The notes below the pieces were generated by a model that was not told the origin of the DNA, made no database searches, and saw only the letters and a list, made by a program, of their open reading frames with translations. 64,000 nt of DNA from Octopus sinensis (lineage: Eukaryota): positions 64,170,001 to 64,234,000 of the forward strand of contig NC_043000.1 of assembly GCF_006345805.1 (NCBI RefSeq), given 5' to 3'. Below are positions 1 to 46,400 of the stretch, piece by piece; within the stretch, counting starts at the first letter, position 1; every line of letters starts with the position of its first letter. Made by a program: the position numbers and the translations under genes.

Positions 1-245
1 GTTGCTGTGTAGTCTGAGAATCAGCCTTGATCAAAGTATTCTCACAATGACCCTGCCATGTTTTTGTGGGGAAACTCTTAGGACTACATTTTAAGTGAAT
101 CCTTTCTTTTCAAAGGTGGTAGGGTGTGATCTGAGAAAGATTTAACTGCTGTTTCTGATAGTTTGAGCAACTACTTAGAGGCTCTCTCATAATCTCAATG
201 TTTAGCATGTTTGCTGGAGCTGTAGATTTGAATCTAAAGTTGTAA

Positions 246-5979: not shown

Positions 5980-8900
5980 GCATAATTGTCCTTATTATTT
6001 ATCTCTAGATCAGGCTCAGTTGAGTGCACTTAAGATTAATGGTATTTCAGCTGGGACCAATCTGGCTTTTTGTATGTCCAAGACTACATTGGGAAAGGTT
6101 TTAGATATACATATTTTCTGTTTCTCAAGATGGTAGGGTATGATTGGCGAAGATTTGGTTGCTACTTTTAGCAAATCAAACGCCTGTGTAGTGGCTCCCA
6201 GATATCTACCTAGTATTTCATGCTATACAAAGTAGTCTCCCTTAGTTATTCTTCGTAGCATCTAAGCCAATAATACTCTGTTCTTTAGTACTGGAAACAA
6301 TATTTCGTATTTCACTAATGTTACAGTTAACTTTTCAAAATTATTTTCTTATGTAATTGCTTTTCTCTAGTAAGTTTGGTTTTGCATGTCTAAAACCTGT
6401 CTTGATGATTTTATAAAAATGTTTTTTTATGTAGTCCAGAGACAAATGAAAAGTTATACAAATTTTTAGTACTTAAATATAAATTGAAAGTACATCAAAA
6501 TACAATTTAGAATAAATGGTATTGAGAAATGAAAACATTTTATATTCATTCATTTATTTAACAGGACCCTACTTAAACTTTATCTTTTTCATTATCAGAT
6601 GCTGGTAACCGTACTTTAGAATTGCTTGATAAGAGTGTTAATGCTACTTCATTACTGAATAAAGTAGAAGTGTTTGGAGAAGGTAAGTGCTTGCCATGTT
6701 ACTAGATATTTTTGAGATAACACAGTAACCATACTTACTTCCATGTACTCATTTCTGCTGTTGAGTAGCTGGAAGATAAATTTTGCAATTATCTTTTATT
6801 GTTTATCTTACATTTGTTTTGGTCATTGGACTGTGGCCATGCTGTGGCACTGCCTTGAAGGGCTTTAGTCAAATGAATCATTCCCAGAATTTTATTTCTC
6901 TTTTTTTTTAAGCCTGGTACTTATTCTATCATCTGTTTCACCAAACTGCTAAGTTACATGAACACAAACAAACCAGCACCAGTTGTCAAGCAGTGGTAGA
7001 GTATAAACACATATACACACATGCACATTCACAAAACCGGGCTTCTTTCAGTTTCCATCTACCAGATCCATTTAGAAGGCTTTGGATGGCCAGGGGCTAT
7101 AGCAGAAGACACTTGCCTAAGATTCCATGCAGTGGGATTGAGCCTGGAATTATCTGGTTGAGAAGCAGACTTCTTACCACACATCCATGACCTGTGTCTG
7201 TAATTAAGATAAATAACATATAGATAAACACATATAAACACAATTTAGTTTTCTGTGAAGCTGTTTTGAATTATAACCAATCTATGACACTAGATTATAG
7301 CACAGTAACTCATTCACATTAAAATTTTAATATGTCTACATCTACTCTAAGCAGTGAACTAGCAGAATCATTAGCACACTTGATAAAATGATCAGCAGTA
7401 TTTTGCTTGTCTTTACATTCTGAGTTCAACTTTGCCTTTCATCCTTTTAGGGTCAATAAGTACCAGTTGAGCCCTGGGGTTGATGTAATCAACTTACCTT
7501 CTCCCCCGAAATTGCTAACATTGTGCCAAAATTTGAAACCAAAATGTCTGCATCTGCTGATTTAAGTTTATGTGAAGGGTTGTGCTTCCTGGAATTCATA
7601 GCACTGTGTAACATGATTTTTGTTCTTGGGTAGCAACTGTTATTTTTTTATTTGCTTACCTCTTCAAAGTATGAAAAATGGCTAATATTTCCTTCAAACT
7701 TTGATCTTGTTACTTTTATTCAAATTCCAAAGAATCCCTCTCAACACATGGCTATGATGTTCCTCTACTATTCCTGCTCATGATCAGAGACACTCACATT
7801 GTCAGCCACTAAGGGCCATGCTCAAGTGGTTCAGGTGAAGCAATTGACAAGCAAATTTGTGGTATTGAGCAGAATATTTGCTATAACAATATTTCTACTT
7901 CAGCAACTCTGTGCTGAATCTGTCTGAAATGTAATGGATTTCAGATCACTAAAGCAAAGTTTGAAGGGAATAGTAGTTATTTCCTTTGATTTTTAGGTAG
8001 ATGCAAATAGGGTGGGGATTAACATTTACTGACCAAAGAAAAATAAAAATTTTGTTACACATTGTAGTTCATAGTGTTTTCAACAAAAACAAGAGAGGAT
8101 ATGATGCCTGTGCTAATTGTGTTTATTAATTTTAATGATTATAACTGTTGAGGTATTAACCCCATCTTTAGAAATGAAGTTTCATTTTTGGATTTGTATG
8201 TGCACATTTTGATCAAGTGTCTTATTCCTGTGTATGTACATTAAAGCAGACTTGATTCAAACTTGGAATGTTTATTTCTAAAATCAAGATTATAACACCA
8301 TTACTTTCTACAAGTGATTGCAATACCATGCTAGGAATCTGTCCCCCTTTAACTTCAATATGTGTCCTACTTTCTACAAAAGCCCTTAATTCCTGCTGTC
8401 AGTATTGAGAAAAGTACTAAGTAACTGCATTGGGAAACACAGCAACTGCTGTTCTCTGCTGCAGCAGCCTGATCAATCGACTAGAAGTAGTTGTTGAACA
8501 ATTTTAGCAGGAATTATTTAGCACAATCAGTGTATTCAGGCACATGATCATCTCTTAACTGTTGAGGATTTTAAAGCTTAGTCAGGGCCTACAGATTCAC
8601 TCTCTTTGCTTTTACCAAAAACACCAAAGCTATTCTTACCCCTGATTCATTAACACAAATGGTAGTTTCTCAAGTGTGAGAAAGAAGTTCTGCAATTTCT
8701 TATAAACAACCTACATAGATGATGTGTTTATAGTGATCATATGTTTGCATTGCACATTAACTCACTCTCTCCATCAAATCAACATTGCCTGACAGGTGCA
8801 TGATGTGCCATACGTCAGATGTTGAAGTGATCGCACAGCAATATGAGATGAAAACTTTTTGCTCAAGAACACAAGCACTGCCTGGTCTGGGAATTAAACC

Positions 8901-23900: not shown

Positions 23901-26900
23901 CTTGCAAAACAAAGATCCTTTGAGAGGTGGGATATTGGAGGAGGTTGCCTTGTAGCAGGCAATGAGAGGTTAGTGTGACAAAGGGACAGAAACAGGTACC
24001 TAGCTATAGAAGAGATACATGGTTACCCTGTCTGGGGGAGAGAGATTGATCAAGAATGAGAGAGAGATATAGAGAGATGGTAGCAATGTGTCACAGCATC
24101 CTCTCAAGGTATGGGCATGAGAATACAAATGGGATGGTAGAGAATTGCTAAAGGTGCATGTGTAGAGAGTAGGGAATTCACATGAATGCAAAGAGGGGAG
24201 AGAGAGTGCAGTGACTGGTGAAACCTGGGTATATAGAGGAGTGGGGAACAACAGGATAACAATGATACAGTGGGCGGGGCACGAAAGACGGAATTGGGCT
24301 GCAAGAATGGGGAAGGAGAGATGTAAAAATACATTTGTGAGGGGGCAGGGTTCTCATCAAAAAATAATTTTTGTCATAAAAAGATAAGTCATTATTTTTC
24401 TTGTGAACTGCGTCAGATAAAAGGCAAGTTTTGTAATTATTGGTGATTAATTTTTGATTCATTGTCACATCTTAATATGCAAGTAACTAGGCAATTTTTC
24501 AATAGATGTATTGTTAGACCAACCATTTAACTTTGACATGAGACTAATATGCTGTTTAATTTGACAAACATGAAATAGTGGTTGAAACTCTAGGAAACGA
24601 AGTTGTTGTTTCATTTGTTTGAACTTTTAGCATTCAGATTACTCTGTCAAAAGTAATACATGTTCATTCACATTGATTTTAATTAATCATCAATTATCTC
24701 ATAGCTTTGAGATTTCAGTGATGTGATTGTTGATTTTTACAATGATCTTGTTAAGTAGGTGTGAGAGACCAGATCTGGCCAGTTTGAACATTAAGCAGGT
24801 AGGGAATTTTGTGCTGGATATAGCCAGTTTCATTGATAAAGGGTTAAACCTTGTTTTTCAATTATGTGGCTCTATTCAGCTACAAAACAAGAACAGATTA
24901 TGCAATCATTGCATTATACCTTAGGCAAGGCAAACTGGCTTACCTCAGTCGAGTGTACTGAAAATAGGCACTGCCTCTCTTACTTCATGCTTAATTATAT
25001 TTAAGACTGTATATACAAATTAAGCATATACTCTAGCAACCTCTATACAAATTATCATTATTTTACATCCATTTTTTCATGTTGGCATGAGGCAGACAGG
25101 TTTTTTCAGGCAGCATTTTACAGCTGGATGCTCTTTCTGTGGCCAAATCTTATAGTTGTCTCTTATGACTTGCAGGGACATGGTGTGTCTGTTCTAATGC
25201 TGGGATACATGTCTATTATTTTGAGAATTATAATAGACTAAACATCTAGTTCGATTCTGAATGCCTTCATTCAATCACATTAGTAGCTGTCTAGCTGATC
25301 AGTTATAGCTCTTGAACTGATTTGGTTAAAAGAAATGACAACAGTAATAATAAGAAAACAACATACTTAAATAAAACTGAAGTACTGTATTATCTAAATT
25401 ATTACTCATTGGAATCTTAAAAGCATGCCTAAACAAAAGAAATCCATTCCATTATTGCTGATATGAAAAAAATAGATCTAAAATAGTTTTGAAAGAAGGG
25501 AAAACACCTCTAGAGATGATTTATCTTTGGGAGATATATATATCTATATTTAACAGCAATAATATAACAACCAGTTAATGATGTAGATTAATAAATACAA
25601 ACAAGTTGCAGAATGTAGGTACGCCTGGCAAGAACTCAACTGTCAGTTAAACATATTTGAAATCTGATGAGTACACTATGCATGAAAGTGCTAATTTTGT
25701 TAAAATGCCATAATAAAAAAAAACATGAAAACCAGACTATGTTTTAACTTTATTCAACTGATATATTATTCTATACACATTTACACAAATTTGAAACAAA
25801 ATATATATATACACACATGCATGCACACACACACACACTTCACTTCATCATCATCATTGTTTTAATGTCCACTTCCCCATGCTTGTATGGAGCAGACTGA
25901 ACTTGTTGGAGTAGATTTTCTCTGGCTGGATGCCATTGGAAATCTTCCCTGTCTATCTTGTAGCAAAGTAACATTTCTTCATGGCTAGACATGTTTTCAC
26001 AGAAAATTGAAAATGGACATCACTTATTTGACGGTGACACTCATTAAATATTACCATGTGATGTCAAGACTAGGTGACACACACACACACCTATACCAAG
26101 CCATGCCTGATGATTGCTAATTTACCTTTCCACACTCCGAGGTTTCTTCAGTTTGAAGCCATTTGGCAGCGTGCATTGACTAGTATGAGACTAAATGTTT
26201 AATATTGTGTAAATCACAGAGAGAGAGGGCTTTCAGTTTCTGTCTACCAGATCCACTTTAAAAGCTTTGGTCAATCCAGGGCTATAGTAGATCAAGTTTC
26301 TGTGCAGTGGGACTGAACCTGAAACCACATGAGATGAGAGAAGAGAGAAATAATTATGTACTTTATTCATATGTAATATTTATTCATTTAATTTTTCAGG
26401 AACTAAATAAAGCGCTAAAGAACTTATCAAATAAGGAAATTAAAATTGATAAAGTCTCTTTAATCACTCCTGAACTACAAAATAAACTGGATATATTCAA
26501 AGACCCTAAGAGTTTCCATATTAATATATCTGAGTATGAAGAAGAGGTAAGTTGGCAGTTAACATTTACCATTAATTTCATGTGGCCAAAATAAATATAA
26601 AACACATTGTTAGGAAAGATTATTTTCTTCACATTCCTTGTTTATGGTTTTGTTATTAATTATACCAATTTGAGGTGCTAAATCTGTATTTTGAAGGTAT
26701 TCTCCAATAATTGAAATGAGTTAAAGATTAATATAATCGTTTATGTTGTTTGAATATTTTATAAATTTGTTATAACCTATAATACCTGTAATTTTTTTTA
26801 GAAAAATTAGCAGAATTAAATCAAGAATTTGAAAAGCTAGAATTTGTTGATTGATGCTGAAAATAATAGTTCATGACAAATTAGATATTTAACCAGCTCG

Positions 26901-28438
26901 GACATATATTAAAAAACTAATGACTTCCAAAAACCCTAGGAGAGAAAGAGGGAAGCGAGTTCTGTTAGAACTCTCTGTCCCTTTGGAGAGTTGCATCAAA
27001 GAGGATAGCAAGAGTAAAGGAAAGAAATATGCTGAGCTAGTGGAGTTGTGCCAAAGCAATGGGTAGTGAACAGGATGTGATCCCATTGAGATGGTATGCA
27101 GAGGGTTTGCAAGCCAGTCCTGCTACAGAGCACATAACATAGTTGACATAGGGACCAGAAGGCCTTCAAGTTGGCTGTGGAGGCAACAAAGTTTGCCTCA
27201 AAGTGGTTGTGAATCAGAAAGTGCAAGCCTTTAAAAGTGTAATGCTACCAGGGGTAGTGCTAACTGGATGCAAGCTTGATCAACCCTGGCTAGGTCATCT
27301 AAGTGAATGTGCCTGATAATGAGAGAGCTGAAACATCACTGCTGATGTGCCCTGGTGCATCACAGGAAGATGTATGGAAAAATATCTATTGCACATATTT
27401 ATTTAGAAATACAAATTAACCTAATTTTTCAACTGCTGGTGATTTTGATATGTCTGTAACTATATTTCCAATGTTTATAATTTTCAATTAGTCTCCAGCA
27501 TAATCAAGAATTTGAAGAAATTTTATTAATTTTTCATTCTTATGCTTTCATTTGGAATATAATAAAATGTTCAATTATAAAATTATGATGGATGGTTTTA
27601 AACTGGAAGATCTCTGTCATAAAACTAGAGGAAGTTTCATACAGATTGTTGTTAAAAGATTAAAGTAACCTTAGTCAACTTTGTTTGAACTAAGATACAA
27701 GAATAGTCAATTGAATACTTAGAAAATAATCTGAGTTTAGCAATCCAGACATACAAATGTAACATCTTTATCATGTTACTATCAGTTGGCCTTTGATATT
27801 TTAACTAGCCATTTTAAACTTGTGATCTTCATTTTAAAGACTGTAAAGGCTATATTTCACCAACTCCTCTATTGACTGATGTTTAGCCCGGTGTTGGAGA
27901 GAGTTTGTCATATAATTCAAATATTTTTAATGTTTCTTCTTTTCTATTCTCAAGCTTCATAAGGTGAGTTCAAATATTTGACCATTGTGATAGCTTGCCA
28001 CACCATCACAATGCATGGAGCACTTGTTTTCATCATTTAGCTTAGTACAAATTATTAAATGGAATCTGCTATGTTTTATAAATTTGTATGTTTATTACAG
28101 CTAAACCATAATTCTGTTAATGTTTTTTTTCTACTTTATTAATATCTAGGCTCATTAACTCCAATTTTAATTTTATTTTTTTAACATATATTGTGTTAAA
28201 AGATTCTTAAATCATTTAAATTAATAAGAGTTATTTTCTGGACATTTTGATAATATATACAAAAAAATCAACTTGTTAATTCATAAAAGTTAAGAATAGT
28301 ATTTTGTGCATGTATAAGAATTTTCACTGCATGTGTATAATATTATATATTTTATGCTGTATTAAAAAATTTAAGTGTTGTATCAAGTTTGCTTTTACGA
28401 TTTTAATTTGCACCATAATTAATATGTTTGTGTATACA

Positions 28439-28477
<39 letters not shown>

Positions 28478-31400
28478 TTATATATAGAAATAAATGTACC
28501 TATGTTGGTATAACGTTAGCTCTCTTATCACGGAAATATAAAGGTGTGGGTTTGAGTCCCGAATATACACAGTGATCACTTATAAGCTTTAAAGCTTGTA
28601 AAATATTGTTATTATTTACAGAATTATCACTTGTCACTGCTTCTCAAATCCTCACAAATATATATATATATATATATATTGTATACATGCACACCTCACA
28701 TTGAGTACCTTTACTAATATGATTGTTAGATGCTATTTTTATAATGAACATTTTGCTTTGTAGATATCAAATGAGAAGGTTTGTGCTTATGTTGTACATG
28801 ATTGCTTGCTTGCAAAACAATAAAGAACTTGTTGAATGTATGACTTCATGACAATTTATCATTACTTACAGCATGTCTTTTGTGGAATCCATATGAATAT
28901 TTTTATGTTATGTTTAATAAGATTATCATGAGCATTATTAATTCACTTTCTTACATTCACTTACTACCATCTTATTTTGTCAATGGGCATGAATATGTAA
29001 AATCACTCTTGAAGCATCATCATCATCATCATCATTGCTTAATGTCCTCCTCCTATGCAGGCATGGGTTACATGATTTGACAGGAGCTGGCCAGGTAGAA
29101 GACTGCATCATACTTCTGTGTCTGTTTTGGCATGATTTTAACAGCTGGATGCCCTTCCTAACACCATCCACCCTGCAGAGTGGGTTGAGTGCCTTTTATG
29201 TGGCACCATCACAGATGAGGTCAGTTTTGGTATGGTTTTTACAGCTGGATGCCCTTCCAAATGCCAGCCACTTCACAGTGTGGACTGGATGCATTTTAAG
29301 TGGAACCAGCACTGGCAGGGTCACCAAGTAACTTGCAGGATAAGGGATCGTTGAGAGTGGGTATTGGAGGAGGTGATCTTGTGACAGATGATGAAATGTT
29401 AGAGTGTGACAGAGAGACAGAAATAGATGCCTTGTTGTTGAGGAGGTACATGGTTACCCAGCCAGAGAAAGAGTTCATAAGAAAGAGGGCAGAAACAGGT
29501 GTACTGCTGTAGAGGAGATACATGGTTATCCAGCCAGAGGGAAGAGTAATGGAGAGAGAGAGAGAGACAGAGTGAGAAATAGCAAGAGTGTAAGAGAGAG
29601 CAGGAGAGAGAGGTTGGCGAAGTGCCATAGCATACTCACAAGGTATAGGTATCAGAGCATAAATGGAATGGTAGAGTAAGGAAGAGAGAGATAAATGATG
29701 GCTGATACCAGGACATACCCTCAAGGTATGGAGGTTATATATGCGGCAGGGTATTGCCAAGAAGCCATGAGTAAGGAGTAGAGGTAGGAAATATTGTGAA
29801 TGATGAGAACCTGGGTTTATAAAGGGGTGGGGAAAGCAGTGATGCAGTGAGCACAGGATTGGGGAGTGGGAGATAATTGTAGTATATGAAGAGGAAATGT
29901 GGTGGAGAGAAGAGATACAGTTTGAAAGAGATGTAGTTTGGTTTGTTGGGGCAGGGTGTGTGAAAATTTTATTATTTGTGGGTGGAACACAATGCTTCTA
30001 GAACTCAGTTTTGTTTGATGTGGGCAGGTCTACTCTAGAAGCTCATGTCACCAGTCATCTCAGTTCATTGTCATTTCTTCCATGAGCCTCAACATCCCAT
30101 GTCTTCCTGGGTCTCCCTCTTCTGCAGGTGTCATCCACTTGTAGTGACTGACACTTCTTTATACAGCTGTCTTCATTCATATGCATCACATGTTTAACCA
30201 ATACAGTCTCCTCTCTTGCACACTGCATTTGATTCTCCTTATGCCCAACTTTTGCTCTTTGTTGTTTATACACATTGATGCTGCACATCCAGTGGAGCAT
30301 ACACATGTCCCCTGTGTCCAGAGCCCATGTCTCACTACCATGGAGTATAGCTGTTCATTCACAAGCATCATGCAATCTACCTTTCACTCTGAAAGATAGT
30401 CCTTTTGTTGCCAATAGAGGTAGTAGCTCTCTGAACTTTCTCCATTTTATTCTTATTCTAGAAACAATTCTTTCAGAGCATCCACTGTCATTGCTAATTT
30501 GGTCACCTAAGTAACAGAAACTACTACCTCAAGAGAGCCTCCTGAGCATTTGAGAGAGTCTAAGTCCTGTGGGCTCTTAGTGCTTATTGTTCCTGCTCAT
30601 CTGCCACACATAAAGGCGACCTTATCTATTAATCTATTTGTGATTCCACTGCATCTATTATGGTGTCTATAACTTACACTGGGTGCAGTGAATGGAATTA
30701 CTTCGCACTCCTTTCCAAAATATTGAGCAGGGCTATTTACCTGACAGAAAGAGTCTTATCTGCTTTTTTGCTAACAACAACTTTGGTCTTTGCTAGGTTA
30801 ACTCTGAGGCCCTTTGATTCCAGGTTTTGCTTCCATACCTGGAATTTCTTCTCTAATTCTGCTCTAGATAATGCAATAAGATTGAGGTCATCATATAGTA
30901 GTTCCCATGGGCATCCAGTTTTGAATTCCTTGGTTATGGCCTGGAGGACTATGATGAATAGGAGTGAACTAAGAACTGAGCCCTGGTAAACACCTACCTG
31001 TATGCTAAATTCATCACTGTATTTATGGCTGACTCTCATCTTACTGACATCACAGTTGTACATGGCTTGTACAGCTCTAACAAGCTATTCCTCTAATCCT
31101 AGCTTCCTTAGAGACCACCAGATAAGAGAACAGGGGACTCTGCCAAAAGCTTTCTCCAAGTTGGCAAAAGCTAAGTACAATGGTTTACTTTTGACCAAAT
31201 ACTTTTCTTGCAGCTGTCTCACTAGAAAGATGGCAACTGTGGTACTCCTCCCAGGTACAAAACCAAACTGTGTCTTATCTAGTTTAATTTTATTCCTCAT
31301 CAATTGAGCTTATATCTCTTAATTTGTATTGTGACAGAAACAATTGAGGAATGCCTCTCTGTGTGTGTGTGTGTGTGTTGTGTGTGTGTGTGTGTGTGCT

Positions 31401-34400
31401 ACAACATACATGCAGTGTAACTGCTTGTGAAGGTGAAAATACACTGAGTAGATTGCTATCAAACATTCAGTTTTCCATCTTAAATGGATTAGAAGTGAAT
31501 CATTGTTTTCAATGGTAACTATTGTAGATTTGGTGAAACTCCTGCTAATTTACAGGCTCAAGTTAAGTAGAATGATGTGAGGCATGTTACCTTGTTTGGT
31601 AGTGGTTAGATTATCTCATGTCTAAAGACTGATTTAAAATTAAGAAAGCTGTATAACTTGATACAGAATTTAAAAAAAATTTATTGAGTGTATATATTTT
31701 TTTTCTAATATTTTAAAAAATAAAGATGCTGTTGCTAAGAATAGATTTTAAATTTTAAATATTTTGCTGATTTTTGAAGTACTCAGTGTTTCAACTAAAG
31801 TTGATTAATGTTTCAACTAATTTACTGTTTGACTACCAAAGTGTGAGAAACATGATCGTTTTAGTGAAACAGTAATTGTCTTATTATATATATTTCTAGT
31901 ACTGTTGTCAGAATACAAAGTATAATTATACGAGTTTATCCATATTTTTTTTCTTTGTGTTCTAATGTGTTGCTTTTTGAACCAGCAGTATTTAAAATGG
32001 ATCATATTTTTTTGTCTCTCATTTGTTAGTCTGAAGAGGAGACAAGATTGTGCTTGTAGTTAAATGCATTTGTTTAACTTGACTTTATCAAGAGAAACAA
32101 TGATCTTCAAGGATTCACTTCTTGAGTGGAAGGAATGGAGAACTTGCTTAGTATTAAATGTAACTATTAAGACACTCTAGAGGGGTGAGGCTTAAAAGAG
32201 GTAGGTCCTACCAGTAGATTGGTCTAGGACTTGGAGAGGCATGGAGGGACTTGTGACTATTGTGACTAGTTGCAAGGCCCCCATCCTTACAAAAATTTAA
32301 ATCTCCAATCCCTCTTGAATTTTGAGAGCATCCCCACCTACCAAATGCCATACATCTTGGGTCCCTAAAGCAGTCTTGTTCTGCTTTACTAAATTAATCT
32401 CAGAGGCCCTACTAGAGGTACATAGGTAGGTATATGAGCTAGACACAGTTGATAAATTCTGAGGCAGAAACCATTGTAGTTGTAGTAGGAGACAAACAGA
32501 AGGAAGACATAGTGTGCCTGTAGTAACTTGAGGTTGTGATGGTATTGACGGATAAAGGTTTGCCTTACACATGTATTATTTATTGGTTTGGGCTTCTTTA
32601 TGCTTGTTCCATCTGCATACCTCCTTTCCAATTTAATATCTATGTGTCACTTTTATGCTCTATTGTCATTGTTTAGTTTACTTTATTGTACCACCATTTT
32701 TAAAATTGTTTACTGCAATTCTTGTTCTATCTTCAGACCTAGTTCATTCTACTTCTGATTGACTGAATGACAATTCTAATCAATGAGATACCTGAATTTT
32801 TTAAATGATTCTCCACTCTGTAAAATTATTGTTCCTTATTGGCTGTTTCCAAAGCTTTCATTCTTTCCTCTGAACCATTTACTTCTTTCTGCTTCTCCCT
32901 TGTTGAAGGATATTGGAAATGCAGCAATGTGAGTCAAGTAACAATTCTGTCTTACATCAAGGCATGTTGTAATAGGAAAAAAATCTACTAAAGAAAATTA
33001 GTAGATAGAAAAGTGTTCTAAGCTTTTAATGAAACTTCCATTATCAGTTTTCAGAATCATTTAATATTTGAGTTAATTTCTTTATATATATTTGAAATAT
33101 TTATATTTACACTAATACATAAGTTTAGAAGTAATTAACAATCATAAGTGTAACTAACTTTCAATACAATATTTTACTCTGCAAGAATAGAGAATGACCT
33201 GAATAGGTGGAGTGATGAACAAAATATCTTGCAGTATTTACTTGCGTAACATTTGTTCAGAGTTCAAATGTTACTAAGGTTGATTTTTACCTTTCCTCCT
33301 TAGGTGGGAAAAGGGGATAAAATACATTACCAGTCACATACTAGGTCAATAACATTGACATATACTCCTCCTCTAAATCTGAGGCCTTGTACCTTTATTA
33401 GAATTTAATGTTACAATATTTTACTCTAAATAAGAACAATGGATTTTCAGAATTGATAGAATGATGAACAGAATGCCTTATGGTGTTTATTTCTGTCTTA
33501 TTACTTTCTAAGTTTGTATCTCACTAAAATTGACTTTGCCATAAATCCTCAGAGGTTAATAGAGTAAATAGTTATGTACCATTGTTAGAAAATGAGGAAT
33601 TGGTAGTCATTAGTGTCAGATAAAATACTTGGGGGTTTTGGTTATTTTCTCTACACTTTGAGTTCAAATCCTGCCAATGTCAACTTTGCCTTTCATCCTT
33701 TCAGGTTTGGTAAAATGCCAGTCTTGGACATTGGATTGACAAAATTGTTAGAATATTGGATGAGATACCTTGCAGCTGCTAGGTACCTTGATGAGGTACC
33801 TTGCAGCTCTTTGGGTTTTGAGCCAAAATATTACCTAAGTAATGAGATCCCACTGATGGCTTCAGCTAATTACTTCCATAAACCACAACTGATTACAAAA
33901 GCTGAAATGGTTAGAAGTCCTTTGTGGCATTTGCTATGACAGTTGATGATACCAATATTCAAAATTAATAGTTTACTCTACATGTTCCAACTTTCTATGC
34001 ATCTTAAAACTGTTTTACTTGTTCATAACTTCTTGTTTGTGTTGCTCTAATTTTTCTGTTTTCAGAGATATAGTTAACAGGTGATTTTAATCCAACACCA
34101 TGTGTTGAAACTGAATCAATTACATAATGAAAGTTCCATTTCAGCCATCTAAAACCACATAAAAACCTTGATTTTGTTTTTTTATATCATGTGGTGGCTT
34201 TTCCATTATATAATTGCTAATTTTATGTTACGAAAAAGAAATTCTGCTATTCTGTTAACCAATTTTGTATGATTGTATGTTTTGAATTGTGTTTTATTAG
34301 ATGGTGTAGTACAGTAATAATTTTGCAGTCTAGTTTCTAACTATTTGTTTATTAATTTTATGGAAAGCATAACATGTTACAAGTATTTTTTTTTCCTTTC

Positions 34401-37400
34401 TCCTAACTCTAACATTTTACATTTAATTATAAAAAGAAGAAATGTTAGCAACAAGTATTTGGTTGAATGAATCCCTGTTCAATTTCATCTATTTTAACAG
34501 TTACTCTGGAAAATATTAAATATAACTTGTTTGTTTTATTTTCCACTAGTTCTTCACATTCTCATGCTACTTTTAAACATTTCTTTTTACAGCTGGGAAA
34601 AAAGATTCTACAAAATGATTTACAAGTCTTGGCTCATAATTTATCTTTAGTTTCTAATGTAAGTACTTTTGTTTATATCCTTTGTTTCATTTTCTAATCT
34701 GTGTTTTATGTACTATGTCTGGAAGAAAGGGGTAGTGCCTATGCTGTTCACCAACACCCACAGGCCAATAATGTTGATGCCTGTAACATTTTGCTTAAAT
34801 TGGTGCAAGTTGACAACTGTAGAAAAGATATTAAGCAGGTAGAGTAATCTAGAGGGATGGTTTTCTATGAAAGAAGAACTTAGTGTAGTCATCATCATTC
34901 ATTGTTCGACCGTGGTCGAGACAATGGAATTTACCATGTTGCGCCAGACTTCACGGTCCATCATAGCATTACGGAGGTCCTGTTGCTGGATGCCTGTATC
35001 CCTGGAGATTACATCAGGGTAGGAGATTGTGCGCCCTCTGGTGTTGCAAGTAGATGGCTTCCAGAGGAGAAGAGTAGAAATTACTTCTTTTTCAGCTCTA
35101 CAACAATGTCCAGCAAACTGGACTCTCCTACCTTTCACAAGAGATGACACAGGTGGTAATTTCCCATATATTTGCATTTTAGTTGGATGGCGCCTCCACG
35201 AGAGATTTTGAGCTCTCATAAGGAGGCGAGTGTAGGTTCCATCCAACCGCCTCTCAAGCTTCTTTGATAACGTCCAGGTTTCTGAGCCATATAGTAGGAT
35301 TGGTTCGACTGTGGCTTTGAATATTTCAAGTTTGAATATTTCAACTTAGTGTAGTAATTAGCTAGATTCTTGGCAGGGTTTGATATATATCATCATCATT
35401 TAACATCTGCTTTCCATTCTGACATGAGGTAGATGGTTTGACTGGAGATTGTAAACTGAAGAGCTGCATCAGGCTCATTCTGTTTTGGTTTGGTTTCTAT
35501 GGCTGGATGCCCTTCATAACTCCAGCCACTCCACAGAGTAGGTTGGATGTCTATTACAATTCACTGGTACGAGTACCTTTCATGTGTCACCAGCACTGAC
35601 CAGAATATATATATATATGAAATTAAAAATATTGCATTTCTAAATCTCTCAGAGAGAGTTATACAGTAGCAGCACGATAAAGTGATGGTTTGTTGCCAAC
35701 TTAATGTGGCAGTCCCAGGAAAGGGAAGAATGCTACTGCTATTTAGCCCCAAGAAACACCATTTCCAGTTGGCTACATGATGCGAGGGAATGCAGTGTAA
35801 ATAACGGACAGTCAAGACTATTGAAAAGGTTGTAAGATGCAACGAAAATTTTAGGAGAATAAAAATAAGAAATAAGTGAAAATTTTACCGGTGAGTGTGT
35901 TACATTATAAGGCACAAAAAGAAAATGACTCTCCCCAGAAACAACAGAATATGCTTCAACACACGAACTCATATAAAGAATCTTGCAAACCAAATCCAAA
36001 AACGAAACCTCTGTAACATTTTGCTAAAAAATTTTTTTTGATTAATTGAATCATAAAATCAGATTCAGCCTAAAAAAAGTACATCAATGTACCAAATTTG
36101 AAAGTTTTCACTTAATTGTAAAATTTCAAAATCTGACAGCAACAGAAAGTATCTCCCTTTCTTTATGTCCATCTCTTTCATTTTTCACTTTTCTCATTGT
36201 AAACCTTCCCCCTCTATTTATATATTTACCACACTCACTTTCGGTATATGCACATCGCTCATGCTGGGTGTGTTTGTGTGTGTGTATGCATGTTTGTAAG
36301 GAGTTTCATTTGGGCAACAGAGTGATTTAGAAAAGGCATGTAAAAGATAATTTAATATCATACTTTTCTGTTAGTAAATACACTTTTTCTTACACACACA
36401 CATACACACCTGGATTAAAAATTTAAACTACAAAATTTTTTTCTGTTGTTGCTTAAATCCCAGCAATGGACCAACCATGGGTTAAACAAATCCTTGAAGA
36501 GGATGGTACCAGGTGGTTGTGAAAATTACCCAGCAATGACAGGATACTCAGCTAGTATAATATAAAATTGTGTATTTGTGAACTATACTCAAAATAATAT
36601 TACATTTTTTTTTGTATAGGGTGCCCTGAATGACACAGCTAAAGTTTTGATGCAAATCCATGATGTGACCTATCTTGCCATGGTAGAAGAAAAGGTATTT
36701 ACTTTGACAGTTTTCACTTCTACATATATTATGCTATTTCCTACAATTTTATTACTATTACATAAACTCATAGTTTGTGCCACATCATAGCACGATGTCA
36801 CTATATGCTCTACTAATTCAAAAGTATTTCATTCAATTCCAGTTAATATTAATTCTAATTTAGCTCCAGATAGCACATATCTACAAGCAAAAGCATTGTA
36901 GCTTTTTGTAACCATTCCTTTTTTTTTCTTTTTTTTCCCCCCTCAGACTATGTTATTAAATGTGTCCTTTAAGACAACATAGGGCGCTATTTGAATACTA
37001 TATCTGAAAAATTGAGCAGCTCTGTAGAGGCTCTCCCTTTGTGACTATTGCAGCTAATTTAGCCTATTTATCTGTACAATACATTTCTAATACTTATAAC
37101 TAATTACCATGTGTTAGATTAGCTACACAGTCATACATTTGTTTCACTATTATTGATGTTGGGTGTCTAGACTGTTCTGCTCAAGTGTGTGAGTATTTTG
37201 AAAATACATCATGGAGTGAAGACTGTGTCCTGCATAGTTATGGGCTGGCTTTTGGCTAGGCATAGCACCTGTTCAGCCACCCTGCCAGGAATACAACAAA
37301 GTCATGAGACTTAGCATGGTGGATTATAAAGAGGTAGTGGAAGAGCTTGACTCAGCCAATGATGCTTCTTACACTGATGCTGAGCAGAGGAATCCTAGAA

Positions 37401-40400
37401 GATCAACGGTCAGGACCACCAAGCTCTATCAAGAGAGTAATTGCAATGCTTCTATAGGGGTAACAGCCATGGTTGTGTAATCAGCAAATGAAAGATTCAC
37501 TGTAACTCAGGCTCCCAATTCAAATTCAAATAATGGCGTTGAATGGTGAAAGCAGAGAAAAGTAAAATACATCTCACAAACACAGGTTAACAAAATTAAC
37601 AAAGCAAATGTGATCCTTTTGTCTCCACCACAGACTGTTTATTGTACATTAGTTATTATTTTACTGATTCAAATAGATAAAAATTTAAGTGAACTTTCAT
37701 AGTAACTTACTGATCCTCTTACCACTCATGCTGTCTACTTTGGTATTTTAACACTGAACTGTTAATCAGTTTACTTCTACTGTTTCTTGGAATTCCGGTA
37801 GAACCACTTATTATTCTCTTTGCTGTACAATTCTTAATGTTTTCAACTGAATAAAATATACTGGTTCTGTGATATTTCATTCATATCTGATATTTAACTG
37901 TTTGACTTATTTCAGAATCGACTAAAGAAGAGTCTTGATGAAGTCAATCAAAAAATGAATATCACGGTAAATAAATTTAATTTGATACTCTTGAAGTGAG
38001 AACCAAAAATGCAATGCATTATTGATGTTTCATTTCATCTTCCATTTTTTTTTTACATGTCTTATTGTCAAAGCCATATTCCCAAATTCTAATGATATTT
38101 AGTAATTTCCTGTCTTTTTTTTTCTGTTTATGTAGACCAGTGGCTCTCAACCATGTTTTACTTGTGAACCCTTTTGATTCCTATTTTAACTCTACTGGAC
38201 CTCCATAGCCATTTGATGTATAAATTTTAAAAATCCTGTATTTTTATAATTAAATATTATTAGGAATTGTATAAGAAATTTATTGTAGAAGTATAAGCAC
38301 ATCAATTTTAACCACAAAATTTTATAAGGACCCTGGTTGGGAACCACTGATGTAGACTTTCAATTTTGTGTTTTCCTTTACATTATTGTACTGTAAACAT
38401 TATAAATTCGATGTATATAACAAAGTGACATCAATTTATGGTATTAATTCAATTAAATTCCTTTAAATGATTTTTAAACTCAATGCAACCATTACTTTAA
38501 GTACGTTATACATATCCATACTGTAATTTTGGGAAATCATAACGGGATACCACTTTTGGGTCTATTATATTGACTCTAAGTTATCTTTTATCATCTCGGA
38601 GGAGGGCAAAAGGAATTTTATTGTACCATCAGTACTAGAGAGGTTGTTCTGATTATTGTAAGTGAGGAGAGCCTTAGCTACCAATTAGAGATGTGAGTAT
38701 GGCAGTGATCTAACTTAACTTAGCATACAGATTGCCTCCATTTTGTAGAAATAGGGAGACAGTTGCAAAAATATCCTGGGTAGCTGGGAGTAACTCTGCA
38801 TTTGCAGTAAATTTCTATCCTATTTCCAGCTACTAAATTACTCCTGCCATGATCTTACTCTGATCTACCTTGGACTTAAAACTGGAACCACATGATTGCA
38901 AAGCAAACTTCATAACCACACAGCCATATATGTGTGTGTGTCCAGTGTGTTTGAGTGGAGTGATTTTTCAGTTAGGATATGAAACTTGAAACATGTTTAG
39001 CATTAACGAGCAACCTCACCCCTCTTAAATGTTAACTTTAGTAATAAATGTGTATGGAATGGTCAATGTTATTGTACCAATGAAAGCATACAAGGACTTA
39101 CTTTATTATATGTAGTATTCTGACATCTATCTTAATAGATATTCAATTTGCTTTTGATCTCACTTTCAAATTTCTCCTAATAGCATATCTTTTTTTTTTA
39201 AATATGCATGAGCAGACTATTTATTTTAATTATATTGTTTTTCAGGAACATCTTGATGATTTAATTAGAGACATTAATGAAACTGAAAATGAAATTAACA
39301 AAAATGGTACCAAAATAATCTCTGTGGTAAATATTTTTATTATTATTTAGTCTGAAGTCAGTTCTTATCGACAAGACCTATGATCAGTTATTCTAGCTGT
39401 GAATATCACATCTTTTTTTTCTCCCTACACACCAATGCATCTTGGATTACTTCATCCAAAGTGTCCTTCCCTTTCTAAGACTGTCGGATATGATTTGTGT
39501 GGGATTTAACCACAATTTCCAGCAAATCCAGTGACCACAAAGAGGCTCTCTCTATCATTCGTCATTTAGTGATGTCAACGCACATTTGTTTTGGGCATGA
39601 TTGCAGACATGTCACATAGCCCCTTTCTGTTATTGGTGACCATTGTCTCATTTTAAAAAAGAAATAAGCTTACTGATGTGATCCCAACTACTTATCTATC
39701 ACTTACAGGGTGACTGTGTTACCAATTACACTGTGGATCACCTGCGTGTTGTGTGAGGCTTAAGGAAGCAACTTCAGTATGAATAGTAAGAAACAGTAAA
39801 GAAGTACAAAATATAGATCATATCTTCTTTGTTGCTGCTTTTCAGCAATTTTCTGTCATCAATTATTTATCTCTTTATTTTACTTTTTTATGGCCATTAC
39901 ACACCATTTTTATGGCCATTACACACCATTTATGGCCATTACACACCATTTTATTCGTGAAAGTAGTTGCCTATTGTTTATAGGATCACATTTGACTTCT
40001 AGCGGCCTCTTCCCCCACTTTTTTTGCACCTGACTACAATCCATGTTAGCATAGAAAATTGATGTTTTACCAATTCTGATAACCCTACTAAATATACATT
40101 TTCAATGATAATTTTTTTTTTTATGAGTGTAATATATTTATTTATTTTCATTTATACAGGTGCTGAAAATTGTTATCAAAAATATTAGCACTATAGTTGT
40201 GGATTCCATAGAAATGGTAGCCAATAAGGTAATTAAGCATTTATTCTCAGACTCACCCTTTATATTGTTGGATAGTTCAAGACCTCACCTCTGCTTATGC
40301 AATTATCACATTATCACCTTTTCAACTCTATCCGTCTCTTTTTTTCAATCTTATCATAAATCCCTTTCATCTCCCCTGTTCCTTGCCATTACACCCTCAG

Positions 40401-43400: not shown

Positions 43401-46400
43401 AAATGAGTACTGAATTAAGCCATGGGGTTCATGTAATTAATTAAAACCTTGAAGGCAATGCCTCAATATTGTTGCAGTCAAACAACTAAAATGAGTAAAA
43501 GCTCATGTATATTTCCGTATCTAAAACCTAACTTATGGATTATTATTATTCACATATGTTTAATTTTGTTTTCTAGAATGGTTTTTGGTTCAGTTTAGGC
43601 TGGGCAGTGATTTTCTTTTTGCCAACTATAATTTTTGCAACAAAACTTGCTTCCCTTTATCGATGTCAGTATAAACGAGATCCGGCCCATGAGTAAGTAC
43701 TGTCATATCATTTTTATTTATGTTTCATAATATATGTATAATGAACTTACTGTATAGTGCTCAGGTGCACTACAACCCATCAGAAAATGTTTCCAAAACC
43801 GCATGTACAATCTTTTGAACTTGTTTCAACCATGTTCTCAGAAAGAAAGATATGGGTTGCATATTTGATAATTTTACATAAAATGTTTCTAATCATGTTA
43901 TGCATAGGCAAGAGACTTGTTCTCTAATGTCATAGTTTAGTTTTGATATTTAAGAATATTGGGTTTATCATCCATGGCTTAAAGGTCCTTTATTTTATAC
44001 CTGATGGAGAAAACTATGTTTTATCTCATACAATGTGTTATAACTGTTTGAGGATTCTGAAATGTCCCTATTAGATATCAAATCTACTATTTTTCAAAGA
44101 CAAATATTTGTTGAACAATTTATCTTTATATATAAAGCACATACACAATTATTTGATTGATTTGCAGAGCTGTAACTGTTCAGATAATTTATAGAACCCA
44201 AAGCAATGGTCAAATTATGCTTTTTAATTCTTTCCCTATCTATCCATCTGGGTCAGGTAACTTCCCCTGTCCATTGTAACCCTTCCATGACAGATACCCC
44301 AATCAAGTGATGAGGCCTGGGTTTTAGTCATATTGGTATTTTGCTAACTGAAATATCTATCTGCACACACTATGACTGCAGATGGTAGTGGTAGTTTGCT
44401 AACTGAACTAGTTGATTGTGGCCATTGACAGTTTGTTATCTGTTCATCTGCTCAGCATTTAGTGATACTCTCCATTGATTCAATAAGATTCATTTGCTGA
44501 AATAGTTCACATTCACCAAGCTGCATCTCCTGATTTCAGTGAACACTGTCTTGGGTAGTATAACGCTATTTAATCCATAGCTGGGACCCTGACAGGTGCT
44601 ACTTTTCTGGGTCAACATGAATTTGGGAATGATAGTAGCAAAGAGGAACTCCTCAACCAGGGTCCTGCTAGTTGATGCAGTTTAAAGTTATGCTCAGGAT
44701 TATTAAAACTTGCCTCATACTGAATTTTGTTTGTCTCTAAATATAATACACTATTAGAAGTTTGTCAACATTAGTGGAGGTTATATTAATGACCATTGCT
44801 GATATTAAATATGTGAAAGTAAAAATCAGTCAGAGAAATCAATAAATTTGTTATTTTGATAATGTAACTAAAAATTATTATTTAGAATATTATTTATTCA
44901 AGAATCTGTTGTACTTCTTTATAGGCTTCATCGTGGTGTTACTTCTGATAAGTCTCATCGTGATGTTACTTCTGATAAGTCTCATCATGTTGTTACTTCA
45001 GATAAGTCTCAGCAACATAGTGTTGTTACTTCAGATAAGTCTCAGCAACATCGTGTTGCTACTTCAGATAAGTCTCAGCAACAGCGTGTTGCTACTTCAG
45101 ATAAGTCTCAGCAAACCGATATCCCTGATAGGTTTGTTTTCCATTATGGAGTAATGTATTCCATAAATGTTAATGTCTTTTTAAATCTCACAATGTTGTA
45201 TTACAGAGTTCTGTTCAAATTTCAGTTGATGTTTTGTTTATTGTTTACTTATTCCCAGTATCATTAATTATATTCTAAATCAACTTATTGTGACAACTAT
45301 ATTTAAGGCAAGAGAAGTTTTCTTTGACATTTGGTTTGTCTGCATAACCTTGAACATTTAAAATAATAAAACTGTTTTCCATTACAGTTTCCTTGTGGTT
45401 GTCACCATAATTAATTTGGAACATAATTCAAGCTATATAGAATATTAAAATAAAAGTTCTTTTCTATGGAAATAAAGACTAACCTAAACTGTTTTAAGTT
45501 TTTTTTTTTTTTTATTATATTGCACTTGAGTTCAGTTCCCCAATTAACCCTTCTTTTTCAATTTTTTTTATTATCCCTAAACCCTTTTTCTCATTTGAAC
45601 CTAATTCTGGTTTCTTTTCTAACCAACAGCCCATGTTCCCCACTCTTTGCTCATCTGTTTTGTTTTCTAATTCTGTTTTCCAACTAACTTCTAAGCTAAA
45701 GGAAAAATGTCTTAGTACCAATTTACCAACCTATGCAAGATAATGCTGAATTCATCTATTTCGAAATATTTACTAAAATGAATGTAGCTAATAAAATTTG
45801 TTCCCATTTCACTTCTAAATATTTTATATCATGCTGCTCTGCTCTTAAAAAGTATAGATATTATACAAATTTGTCATAGTTTAGATGAGTAGTTATTCAT
45901 ATCTCTGCAGTGATGAAAGTTATTCTGATGGGGAAAATTATAATCATATACCTCTGTCTAGGTAAGTACCTGTCTTCTGAGATCCTCAATCACATTGCTT
46001 ACAAACCAGAAATCTCCTCCCAATTTTTGCTGGCATTACAATGGATTATAAAATCTGTTGTAGTATTTTACTTGACTGTCAAAAAAAAAGTATTGTCATA
46101 TGTTCCATTTGATAAGCAATTACAAATGTAAGTTTTAAATTGAAACCAATGCCAGTAAGTATCATTATTGTAATGATCTCCTGCTCCTTGATTTTCTATT
46201 GTATTGCCTGTCAATACAGTTGAGTTTTACTACTAATATAAGAATGTACTTACTTGTAATTTTACATGAGCTTATTTGATGTGATTACATTGATTTAAGG
46301 TTTGATTGTAGATAAGATTTAAATTATATTTTGTTACTATTTGAAAATGACAATGAAAATTGACATAATAATGAATTTGCTATAACTAATTTGAAGAAAA

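What the first reader, a model, noticed from the sequence alone, without database searches (positions are those of the whole stretch)
27955..34313. A chain of five microexons appears to spell out a second, paralogous version of prominin exon 13
Seen: five tiny AG..GT-bounded segments in the 8-kb exon 12-13 intron (27955-27963, 28764-28778, 32909-32928, 34066-34080, 34301-34313; 9+15+20+15+13 = 72 nt). Their phases chain as 0-0, 0-0, 0-2, 2-2, 2-0 and give an open 24-aa peptide, LHKISNEKDIGNAAIDIVNRWCST. Two have the consensus gtgagt donor after long pyrimidine tracts, and m4 is open only in the phase left by m3. The peptide aligns without gaps to exon 13 ([22 protein letters not shown]) at L1, K3, D9, I/L10, A14, D/N16 and I/L17. 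K3, 9, 10, A14, D16 and 17 are also the conserved positions of the human PROM1 segment as I recall it ([24 protein letters not shown], 24 aa). Inference: an exon duplicate was broken into microexons and is used either instead of exon 13 or in tandem with it, allowing combinatorial variation of one extracellular helix. This recalls schistosome micro-exon genes. Established: in bilaterians the Srrm234 eMIC domain promotes neural microexons via UGC motifs near the 3' splice site. TGC is present upstream of m2, m3 and m4, although it is a common trimer. I know of no description of this in prominins.
Basis: partly seen in the sequence, partly recalled or inferred. Interest (0 to 1): 0.92.

Follow-up and report, generated by a model that had tools for sequence, protein, structure and literature searches.

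The report
Two conserved microexons in octopus prominin
Of the five tiny "exons" proposed in one intron of an octopod prominin gene, two (9 and 15 bases) are conserved with their splice sites and reading frame in a distant octopod and are probably real alternative microexons, while the other three, and the idea that the five spell a second copy of exon 13, look like chance.

Summary
All five AG..GT segments exist as described, and the chain translates to LHKISNEKDIGNAAIDIVNRWCST. As a chain it is not special. The intron offers 1.55e10 open in-frame five-member 72-nt chains, and 2e8 of them match exon 13 at least as well. Pfam and a 59-homolog profile score the chain like random chains. All 60 prominin homologs join exon 12 directly to exon 13. 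m3+m4 keep the frame only through m5, whose splice sites are weaker than those of all 22 real exons.

The orthologous intron of Argonauta hians changes the verdict for two members. m1 (27955-27963) and m2 (28764-28778) keep AG, GT, exact length and open frame (LHK/LDK, ISNEK/MSKKK). They sit on the two most conserved islands of the only large conserved intronic block in the gene. That block also holds all three UGCAUG motifs of the intron, each conserved. m3 and m5 have no counterpart, and m4 loses its donor.

Best reading: two independent, frame-preserving alternative cassette microexons insert 3 and/or 5 residues into the second large extracellular loop. No transcript containing them was available, so inclusion is inferred. 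A transcript from another octopus also reveals an unlisted exon at 26802 with an immediate stop.

The parts
26400..26546 (+). Exon 12 of the prominin-1-like gene. It ends in phase 0 (...SEYEEE).
   Evidence: Matches transcript contig L001 of another octopus. Part of the 22-exon single-ORF model. Pfam Prominin.
27675..28841 (+). Conserved intronic block containing m1, m2 and their putative regulatory elements. It is interrupted by a (TG)n/insertion stretch at about 28486-28660.
   Evidence: Collinear blastn blocks to the Argonauta intron (62% over 866 nt, E 4e-53; 72% over 187 nt, E 3e-24). It is the only large non-exonic, non-repeat conserved block in the gene.
27955..27963 (+). m1: 9-nt frame-preserving microexon candidate CTTCATAAG (LHK). 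Acceptor ttctattctcaag|, donor |gtgagt.
   Evidence: Best acceptor+donor pair in the window (5.4/8.5). Argonauta has attctcaag|CTTGATAAG|gtgagtt (LDK) at L003 52913-52921. Local alignment score 44 against a null of 14 +/- 1.7. The island is 96% identical over 25 nt.
28012..28017 (+). UGCAUG (Rbfox-type motif) 49 nt downstream of the m1 donor, conserved in Argonauta.
28307..28333 (+). Two further UGCAUG motifs (28307-28312 and 28328-33) between m1 and m2, both conserved. With 28012 they are the only three TGCATG in the 8-kb intron.
28754..28756 (+). UGC 10 nt upstream of m2, within tgctttgtag|, conserved in Argonauta.
28764..28778 (+). m2: 15-nt frame-preserving microexon candidate ATATCAAATGAGAAG (ISNEK). 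Acceptor tgctttgtag|, donor |gtttgtgctt.
   Evidence: Argonauta has tgctttgtag|ATGTCGAAGAAGAAG|gtttgtgctt (MSKKK) at L003 53517-53531. Both 10-nt splice flanks are identical and there is no indel in the exon. Three of four substitutions are at codon position 3. Alignment score 49 against a null of 14. Generic PWM scores are weak (-2.6/0.6) in both species.
28803..28813 (+). UGCUUGCUUGC repeat 25-35 nt downstream of the m2 donor, conserved in Argonauta.
32909..32928 (+). m3: 20-nt AG..GT segment with strong sites. Not supported as an exon.
   Evidence: PWM 6.5/4.0, but there is no counterpart in the Argonauta intron (score 14 against a null of 12.9 +/- 1.4). It shifts the frame.
34066..34080 (+). 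m4: 15-nt AG..GT segment with strong sites. Not supported as an exon.
   Evidence: PWM 5.8/4.6. In Argonauta only the pyrimidine tract and AG align, and the body and GT donor are lost. It lies in window 33995-34592, which has no counterpart in octopus contig L002. m3+m4 alone run into a stop in exon 13.
34301..34313 (+). m5: 13-nt AG..GT segment. Not supported as an exon.
   Evidence: Acceptor -2.3 and donor -4.6, below all 22 real exons. No Argonauta counterpart. It is the only segment that restores the frame after m3+m4.
34593..34658 (+). Exon 13 ([22 protein letters not shown]).
   Evidence: It scores +20.2 bits on the family profile.
26802..27064 (+). Exon '12b', not in the finding. In another octopus's transcript it is spliced directly to exon 12 and gives ...SEYEEE-KN-stop in both species. 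It is an alternative terminal or poison exon that runs into a degenerate transposon-like ORF.
   Evidence: L001 nt 1919-2173 aligns to window 26800-27064 at 78%. Acceptor ttttttttag|AAAAATTAG. No strong donor up to 27700.

Best explanation
The window holds 22 exons of a prominin-1-like gene of an octopod. The canonical mRNA joins exon 12 directly to exon 13.

Inside the 8-kb intron lie two independent alternative cassette microexons, m1 (9 nt, LHK) and m2 (15 nt, ISNEK). Each starts and ends in phase 0, so including either or both inserts 3, 5 or 8 residues (...EYEEE[LHK][ISNEK]LGKKIL...). The insertion site is in the second large extracellular loop, about 110 residues after TM4, at a point where no other prominin has an insertion.

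Their use is probably tissue-regulated through the conserved flanking intron. That includes three conserved UGCAUG (Rbfox-type) sites downstream of m1 and upstream of m2, plus conserved UGC motifs hugging m2 (Srrm/eMIC-type or other UGC-binding factors).

m3, m4 and m5 are chance pseudo-exons. The resemblance of the five-part peptide to exon 13 results from choosing among a vast number of possible chains.

Shown: anatomy, frame, cross-species conservation and motifs. Inferred: actual inclusion in mRNA, the regulators, and the effect on the protein.
For: - The gene model is a single 665-aa ORF, Pfam Prominin to the end of the profile.
- m1 and m2 keep AG, GT, exact length and open frame in Argonauta hians. 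There are no indels inside them although indels are frequent around them. Five substitutions fall at codon positions 3,3,3,1,1 and none at position 2.
- They occupy the two most conserved islands (96% over 25 nt) of a stretch that is 56% identical overall.
- Alignment scores are 44 and 49, against a shuffle null of 14 +/- 1.7.
- Gene-wide, every other collinear conserved block is an exon, apart from a transposon-like block and a 108-nt piece.
- Only 20 of 954 AG..GT segments keep both sites and length in Argonauta, and 11 of those are variants of m1/m2. P(at least 2 of 5 random picks) is 0.001-0.004.
- All three TGCATG in the intron lie in the block and are conserved. UGC at -10 of m2 and UGCUUGCUUGC downstream are conserved.
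- Positive control: exon 20 (51 nt) is transcript-verified in another octopus but omitted from the Argonauta annotation. It shows the same pattern, with flanks more conserved than the body and an in-frame indel only.
- No Rfam family or ORF explains the block.
- Vertebrate PROM1 is a known microexon-containing gene (PMC11445533).
Against: - No transcript containing m1 or m2 was seen. The octopus total-RNA contigs go exon 12->12b and intron->exon 13. The Argonauta annotated protein and six transcript-derived proteins of another cephalopod (the P0005 cluster) join the exons directly.
- m2's splice sites are weak on a generic matrix (-2.6/0.6). Its donor gtttgt is unlike the 21 real donors, and m1 uses an AAG acceptor.
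- Only one other genome could be compared.
- Pfam scores fall when the residues are inserted. That is expected for an alternative insertion, but it shows the residues are not part of the conserved fold.
Confidence: 0.68

Rival explanations
1. The 27675-28841 block is a conserved intronic regulatory element, for example an enhancer or a splicing or polyadenylation control region for exon 12b or exon 13. Under this reading the AG..GT pairs at m1 and m2 are never used as exons.
For: No transcript with m1/m2 was found. The block contains other conserved islands without AG..GT, such as 28388-28424. m2's sites are weak on a generic matrix.
Against: The conservation peaks fall exactly on the pyrimidine tract+AG and the GT(GAGT) of both segments. 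Exact length and open frame are kept while the flanks carry indels. Substitutions inside m2 favour codon position 3. The pattern mirrors the verified alternative exon 20.
Confidence: 0.2
2. One reading: all five microexons are spliced in series, or combinatorially, to encode a 24-aa paralogue of exon 13 that replaces or duplicates that helix.
For: The chain is open and in frame. m1, m3 and m4 have unusually strong site pairs, 3 observed against 0.4-0.7 expected per 8 kb (P 0.009-0.03). The chain matches family-conserved positions L1, K3, D9 and A14, and lies in the top 2.5% of alternative chains on the family profile.
Against: - The family profile score is negative (-8.8 against +20.2 for exon 13), and 3,554 alternatives score as well.
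- On Pfam it is indistinguishable from random chains.
- m3 and m5 are absent and m4's donor is lost in Argonauta.
- The m4-m5 stretch is missing from octopus contig L002.
- The frame depends on m5, whose sites are weaker than those of every real exon.
- The length is 72 nt against 66 nt for exon 13.
- No homolog has any insertion or replacement there.
Confidence: 0.03
3. Everything is chance: none of the five segments is an exon, and the Argonauta match at m1/m2 is coincidental within a slowly evolving intron stretch.
For: The number of possible AG..GT segments and chains is enormous.
Against: The coordinates were fixed before Argonauta was examined. The two best islands in the intron coincide with m1 and m2. 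The empirical P is 0.001-0.004. The rest of the intron is essentially unalignable.
Confidence: 0.07

Closest known systems
Vertebrate PROM1 retina-enriched microexon (exon 4), part of the Srrm3/Musashi-dependent photoreceptor splicing programme (PMC11445533 and the Ciampi et al. 2022 paper cited there)
   Same: Same gene family. It is a short, frame-preserving alternative exon that adds a few residues to an extracellular part of prominin. The proposed regulation is tissue-specific.
   Different: The position in the protein differs: N-terminal extracellular domain in vertebrates, against the second large extracellular loop (exon 12/13 junction) here. The two are not orthologous, and here there are two microexons side by side. 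Inclusion and tissue specificity were not shown here.
   Same: Sizes of 9 and 15 nt are multiples of 3. The flanking intron is strongly conserved. A conserved UGC lies 10 nt upstream of m2.
   Different: m1 has no UGC within 30 nt upstream. Neural or retinal inclusion and Srrm dependence are untested.
Rbfox-regulated alternative exons (conserved intronic UGCAUG); established knowledge
   Same: Three conserved UGCAUG sit in the flanking intron, at +49, +344 and +365 from m1. They are the only three in 8 kb.
   Different: No binding or expression data. The motif count is small.
Schistosome micro-exon genes
   Same: Symmetric (phase 0-0) very short exons in series.
   Different: In those genes most of the coding sequence is a long run of microexons. 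Here there are two optional microexons in an otherwise ordinary 22-exon stretch. The analogy does not hold.

Membership tests
Prominin (Pfam PF05478) | Significant match to the family profile along the protein | tested here: met
   Upstream exons E 7e-48 (profile positions 227-501). Exons 11-19 score 120-130 bits over positions 541-799/799. 681 homologs at E <= 0.001.
Alternative cassette microexon | Length of about 30 nt or less, bounded by AG and GT | tested here: met
   m1 is 9 nt and m2 is 15 nt.
Alternative cassette microexon | Frame-preserving and open on its own | tested here: met
   Both are phase 0-0 and stop-free in the window and in Argonauta. m3, m4 and m5 are not frame-preserving individually.
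Alternative cassette microexon | Exon and flanking intron conserved across species, with splice sites and length kept | tested here: met
   Met for m1 and m2 against Argonauta hians. Not met for m3, m4 and m5.
Alternative cassette microexon | Observed in spliced transcripts | tested here: inconclusive
   Not present in the few transcripts reachable: L001/L002 from one octopus total-RNA sample, the Argonauta annotated isoform, and six proteins of the P0005 cluster. No read-level data were available.
eMIC/Srrm-dependent neural or retinal microexon | UGC motif close upstream of the 3' splice site | tested here: inconclusive
   m2 has a conserved TGC at -10. m1 has none within 30 nt.
eMIC/Srrm-dependent neural or retinal microexon | Neural or retinal-specific inclusion that depends on Srrm | not testable with these tools
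   No tissue RNA-seq was accessible.
Rbfox-regulated exon | Conserved UGCAUG in the proximal flanking intron | tested here: met
   28012, 28307 and 28328 are all conserved in Argonauta.
Tandem exon duplicate / paralogue of exon 13 | Sequence similarity to exon 13 above what selection among alternative chains gives | tested here: not met
   BLOSUM62 sum -7. Pfam gain +2.2 bits against +12.7, with random chains at 11.1-17.2 against 14.2. Family profile -8.8 against +20.2, with 3,554 of 139,773 alternatives at least as good.
Tandem exon duplicate / paralogue of exon 13 | All parts conserved together | tested here: not met
   m3 and m5 have no Argonauta counterpart, and m4's donor is lost.
Schistosome-type micro-exon gene | Most of the coding sequence built from a long run of symmetric microexons | tested here: not met
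   The window holds 22 ordinary exons of 26-188 nt. Only two microexon candidates are conserved.

The most novel reading that the evidence does not exclude
In this species the two conserved microexons are joined by lineage-specific m3-m5.

A milder version is that m1/m2 are photoreceptor- or neuron-specific. That would be an independent, convergent origin of a prominin microexon programme in cephalopods and vertebrates.
Probability: 0.04. Interest if true: 0.8.

Novelty: new member of a known kind. Interest (0 to 1): 0.45.

Why it matters
Prominin organises photoreceptor and ciliary or microvillar membranes, and vertebrate PROM1 carries a retina-specific microexon linked to disease. Finding conserved microexons at a different site of a cephalopod prominin would be a clean case of microexons evolving recurrently in the same ancestral gene. 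That theme is currently under study across bilaterians (bioRxiv 10.64898/2026.09.05.749416, which includes Octopus bimaculoides but does not mention prominin). It also yields a directly testable prediction: +9, +15 and +24 nt isoforms, possibly in the retina or optic lobe, governed by conserved UGCAUG/UGC elements.

The case also carries a methodological lesson. Splice-matrix strength pointed the wrong way. The weak-looking m2 is conserved, while the strong-looking m3 and m4 are not.

Tried and rejected
1. I first concluded that the whole finding was chance, from the chain counts, the weak m2/m5 sites and the Pfam/profile nulls. The Argonauta intron overturned this for m1 and m2.

2. SINE-derived donors. 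The 'gtgagttcaaat' of m1 resembles the GAGTTCAAAT box of the local SINE-like repeats. But the real exon 11 donor has the same string, the m1 flanks match no repeat, and sensitive self-blast found nothing.

3. Recursive-splicing sites. m1 and m2 do not start with GT, so no 5' splice site is regenerated at the exon 12 junction.

4. An alternative acceptor for m4 (34068). m3 plus the 13-nt m4' is in frame but contains TAA.

5. My provisional exon at 37289-37408 gained 10 Pfam bits, but the octopus transcript uses 37916-37966 instead and Argonauta shows no conservation at 37289. This shows that Pfam rewards any filler where the profile expects residues.

6. The family alignment does confirm that L1, K3, D9/L10, A14 and L17 are the conserved positions.

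7. The first protein search, with exon 12 + chain + exon 13, returned nothing. That was a sensitivity limit of the word index, not evidence.

9. ncRNA or nested-gene explanations for the conserved block. There is only a sub-threshold mir-297 hit on (TG)n and no ORF of 70 aa or more.
Full report
**What is in the sequence.** The 72-nt concatenation translates to LHKISNEKDIGNAAIDIVNRWCST. Exon 12 is 26400-26546 and ends in phase 0. Exon 13 is 34593-34658 ([22 protein letters not shown]). The intron is 8046 nt.

**The gene.** Spliced exons match Pfam Prominin: E 7e-48 for the upstream part, and 120-130 bits to the last profile position for exons 11-19.

Two Logan contigs, L001 and L002 (proteins P0001 and P0003), come from run SRR3401912. 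A paper describes that run as an octopus meta-transcriptome from the datasets of Shi et al. (PMC11662614). The protein is 67-74% identical to the window's. The contigs map exon by exon onto the window.

With them I built a 22-exon model that reads as one 665-aa ORF ending in a single stop. The direct 12->13 splice is therefore in frame and sufficient.

**The chain as a whole is what chance gives.**
- The intron contains 954 AG-(3..30)-GT segments.
They give 7,125 such chains, 87 of them equally similar.
- At the same floor the comparable intron 20-21 yields 126,327 open in-frame five-chains.
- For a single pre-specified peptide the similarity is marginal: 4 identities, BLOSUM62 sum -7, shuffle P 0.02-0.15.
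- In place of exon 13 the chain adds 2.2 Pfam bits, against 12.7 for the true exon.
- A position-specific profile of the exon 13 segment from 59 homologs gives exon 13 +20.2 bits and the chain -8.8 bits. That is the top 2.5% of alternatives, but 3,554 alternatives do as well and the best reaches +10.
- All 60 aligned prominins, from cephalopods to distant animals, join the two exons with no insertion. So do six transcript-derived proteins of the P0005 cluster.

**Splice sites.** On a generic weight matrix the 22 real exons have acceptors of -0.9 to 8.3 and donors of -0.4 to 7.7.

| Segment | Acceptor | Donor |
|---|---|---|
| m1 | 5.4 | 8.5 |
| m2 | -2.6 | 0.6 |
| m3 | 6.5 | 4.0 |
| m4 | 5.8 | 4.6 |
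| m5 | -2.3 | -4.6 |

Pairs as strong as m1, m3 and m4 are rare. Six occur on the + strand and one on the - strand of the window.

m3+m4 shift the frame, and every chain containing them needs m5. At this stage I regarded only m1 as a weak candidate.

**Evidence from another octopus.**
- L001 runs from exon 12 into window 26802-27064. This is an unlisted exon ('12b') behind a T-rich acceptor, giving ...SEYEEE-KN-stop in both species.
- In L002, exon 13 is preceded by 274 nt that align collinearly to window 33663-33994 and then abut exon 13. Window 33995-34592, which holds m4 and m5, has no counterpart.
- The library is total RNA, so this is probably unspliced pre-mRNA with a deletion, or a splice. 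Either way m4 and m5 are not in that transcript.
- No contig joins exon 12 to exon 13 or shows any microexon. Contigs cannot exclude minor isoforms.

**The decisive comparison.** The exhaustive search with P0001 returned P0004, annotated as prominin-1-A-like isoform X4 of Argonauta hians. Its genomic locus could be fetched (L003).

The orthologous intron is 6779 nt. Most of it does not align, but window 27675-28485 and 28661-28841 align collinearly (62% and 72%; E 4e-53 and 3e-24).
- At base level m1 reads attctcaag|CTTCATAAG|gtgagtt, against attctcaag|CTTGATAAG|gtgagtt in Argonauta.
- m2 reads tgctttgtag|ATATCAAATGAGAAG|gtttgtgctt, against tgctttgtag|ATGTCGAAGAAGAAG|gtttgtgctt.
- Splice dinucleotides, exact lengths and open frames are kept (LHK/LDK, ISNEK/MSKKK).
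- Indels occur just outside the segments but not within them.
- Three of the four changes in m2 are at codon position 3.

In the 1.5-kb stretch, which is 56% identical overall, the two best islands (96% over 25 nt) are m1 with its sites and m2's acceptor. m2's donor flank follows at 92%.

Targeted local alignment gives scores of 44 and 49, against a shuffle null of 14 +/- 1.7. m3 (14) and m5 (13) are at null level. m4 (20) aligns only through its pyrimidine tract and AG, and its body and donor are gone.

Across the gene, collinear conserved blocks are exons, with three exceptions: this block, a transposon-like block and a 108-nt piece.

Of all 954 AG..GT segments only 20 keep AG, GT and length in Argonauta, and 11 of those are overlapping variants of m1/m2. 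The chance that 2 of 5 random picks would be conserved is 0.001-0.004.

**Regulatory signature and control.**
- The only three TGCATG hexamers in the 8-kb intron (28012, 28307, 28328) lie between m1 and m2, and all are conserved. So are a TGC 10 nt upstream of m2 and a TGCTTGCTTGC downstream of it.
- Constitutive exons of this gene have conserved flanks of about 90 nt or less.
- Exon 20 (51 nt) is present in the octopus transcript but omitted from the Argonauta annotation. It has conserved flanks of 157 and 383 nt, flanks more conserved than its body, and only an in-frame indel. This is the same pattern as m1/m2, and it shows that the Argonauta annotation does not list every conserved exon.
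- No Rfam family or ORF explains the block.

**Interpretation.** m1 and m2 are most likely two independent alternative cassette microexons. They would add 3, 5 or 8 residues at the exon 12/13 boundary of the second large extracellular loop. Conserved UGCAUG and UGC elements would control them.

Inclusion in mRNA is inferred, not shown. m3-m5 are best explained as chance pseudo-exons, and the 'second exon 13' reading is not supported.

Single alternative microexons are already known in vertebrate PROM1 (exon 4, PMC11445533). This is therefore a new member of a known kind at a new position, not a new kind.

**Caveats.**
- Only one other genome and very few transcripts could be examined.
- The splice matrix is generic and written from memory of metazoan consensus frequencies.
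- The species of the window and of SRR3401912 are not known to me.

Noticed in passing
window 26802-27064 (and beyond): Unlisted exon '12b'. In the other octopus's transcript (L001), exon 12 is spliced to this site and the frame stops at once (KN*), in the window as well. That would give a truncated prominin (TM1-TM4 plus part of the second large extracellular loop) or a poison exon. In frame 3 both species read a similar short ORF ([16 protein letters not shown] against KLTKLNQEFEYLEIR*), out of frame with exon 12. There is no clear counterpart in Argonauta.
   Followed up: partly
window 26930-27330: Degenerate, stop-interrupted transposon-like ORF (..[28 protein letters not shown]..) immediately inside or after exon 12b. 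It is also present in the octopus transcript contig.
   Followed up: no
L002 nt 1-274; window 33663-33994 and 33995-34592: The octopus contig carrying exons 13-22 starts with intron-like sequence collinear with window 33663-33994 and then abuts exon 13. About 600 nt of the window have no counterpart there, although Argonauta does align to part of it (33919-34190). Neither octopus contig joins exon 12 to exon 13, so in that sample the 12->12b and unspliced forms seem to dominate.
   Followed up: partly
window 45911-45961 (exon 20) and 45754-46344: A 51-nt exon ([18 protein letters not shown]) used in the octopus transcript but absent from the Argonauta annotated isoform. It is conserved in Argonauta DNA with a 3-nt in-frame indel and long conserved flanks. 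It is probably an alternative exon of the cytoplasmic tail.
   Followed up: yes
window 37289-37408: A 120-nt open, phase 0-0 segment with good splice sites (5.0/3.1) that raises the Pfam Prominin score by 10 bits. The octopus transcript does not use it (the real exon 15 is 37916-37966) and it is not conserved in Argonauta. It is probably a pseudo-exon.
   Followed up: partly
window 7997-8011 and 25176-25182: Two other microexon-sized AG..GT pairs with strong sites. The first would introduce an in-frame TAG. Neither lies in a block conserved with Argonauta. They are examples of strong-looking chance pairs.
   Followed up: partly
window 33260, 33660, 48256 (+) and 41426 (-): Copies of a SINE-like repeat with a tRNA-like GAGTTCAAAT box followed by gtcaac(t/c)ttgcctttca. 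Further repeat copies cover 28993-29577 and 30780-31281.
   Followed up: partly
window 59875-61934: About 2 kb after the stop codon (last exon and presumed 3' UTR) aligns to Argonauta at 69%. This is the longest conserved block in the locus.
   Followed up: no
window 28388-28424: Conserved island (92% over 25 nt) between m1 and m2 with no AG..GT pair (tttgcttttacgattttaatttgcaccataattaata). Its function is unknown, and it may be a splicing regulatory element.
   Followed up: no
L003 57941-57952: Argonauta's exon 13 uses an AAG acceptor (ctttaaag|CTTGGAAAAC). AAG acceptors, as in m1, are therefore used by real exons of this gene family, although none of the 22 exons in the window has one.
   Followed up: no
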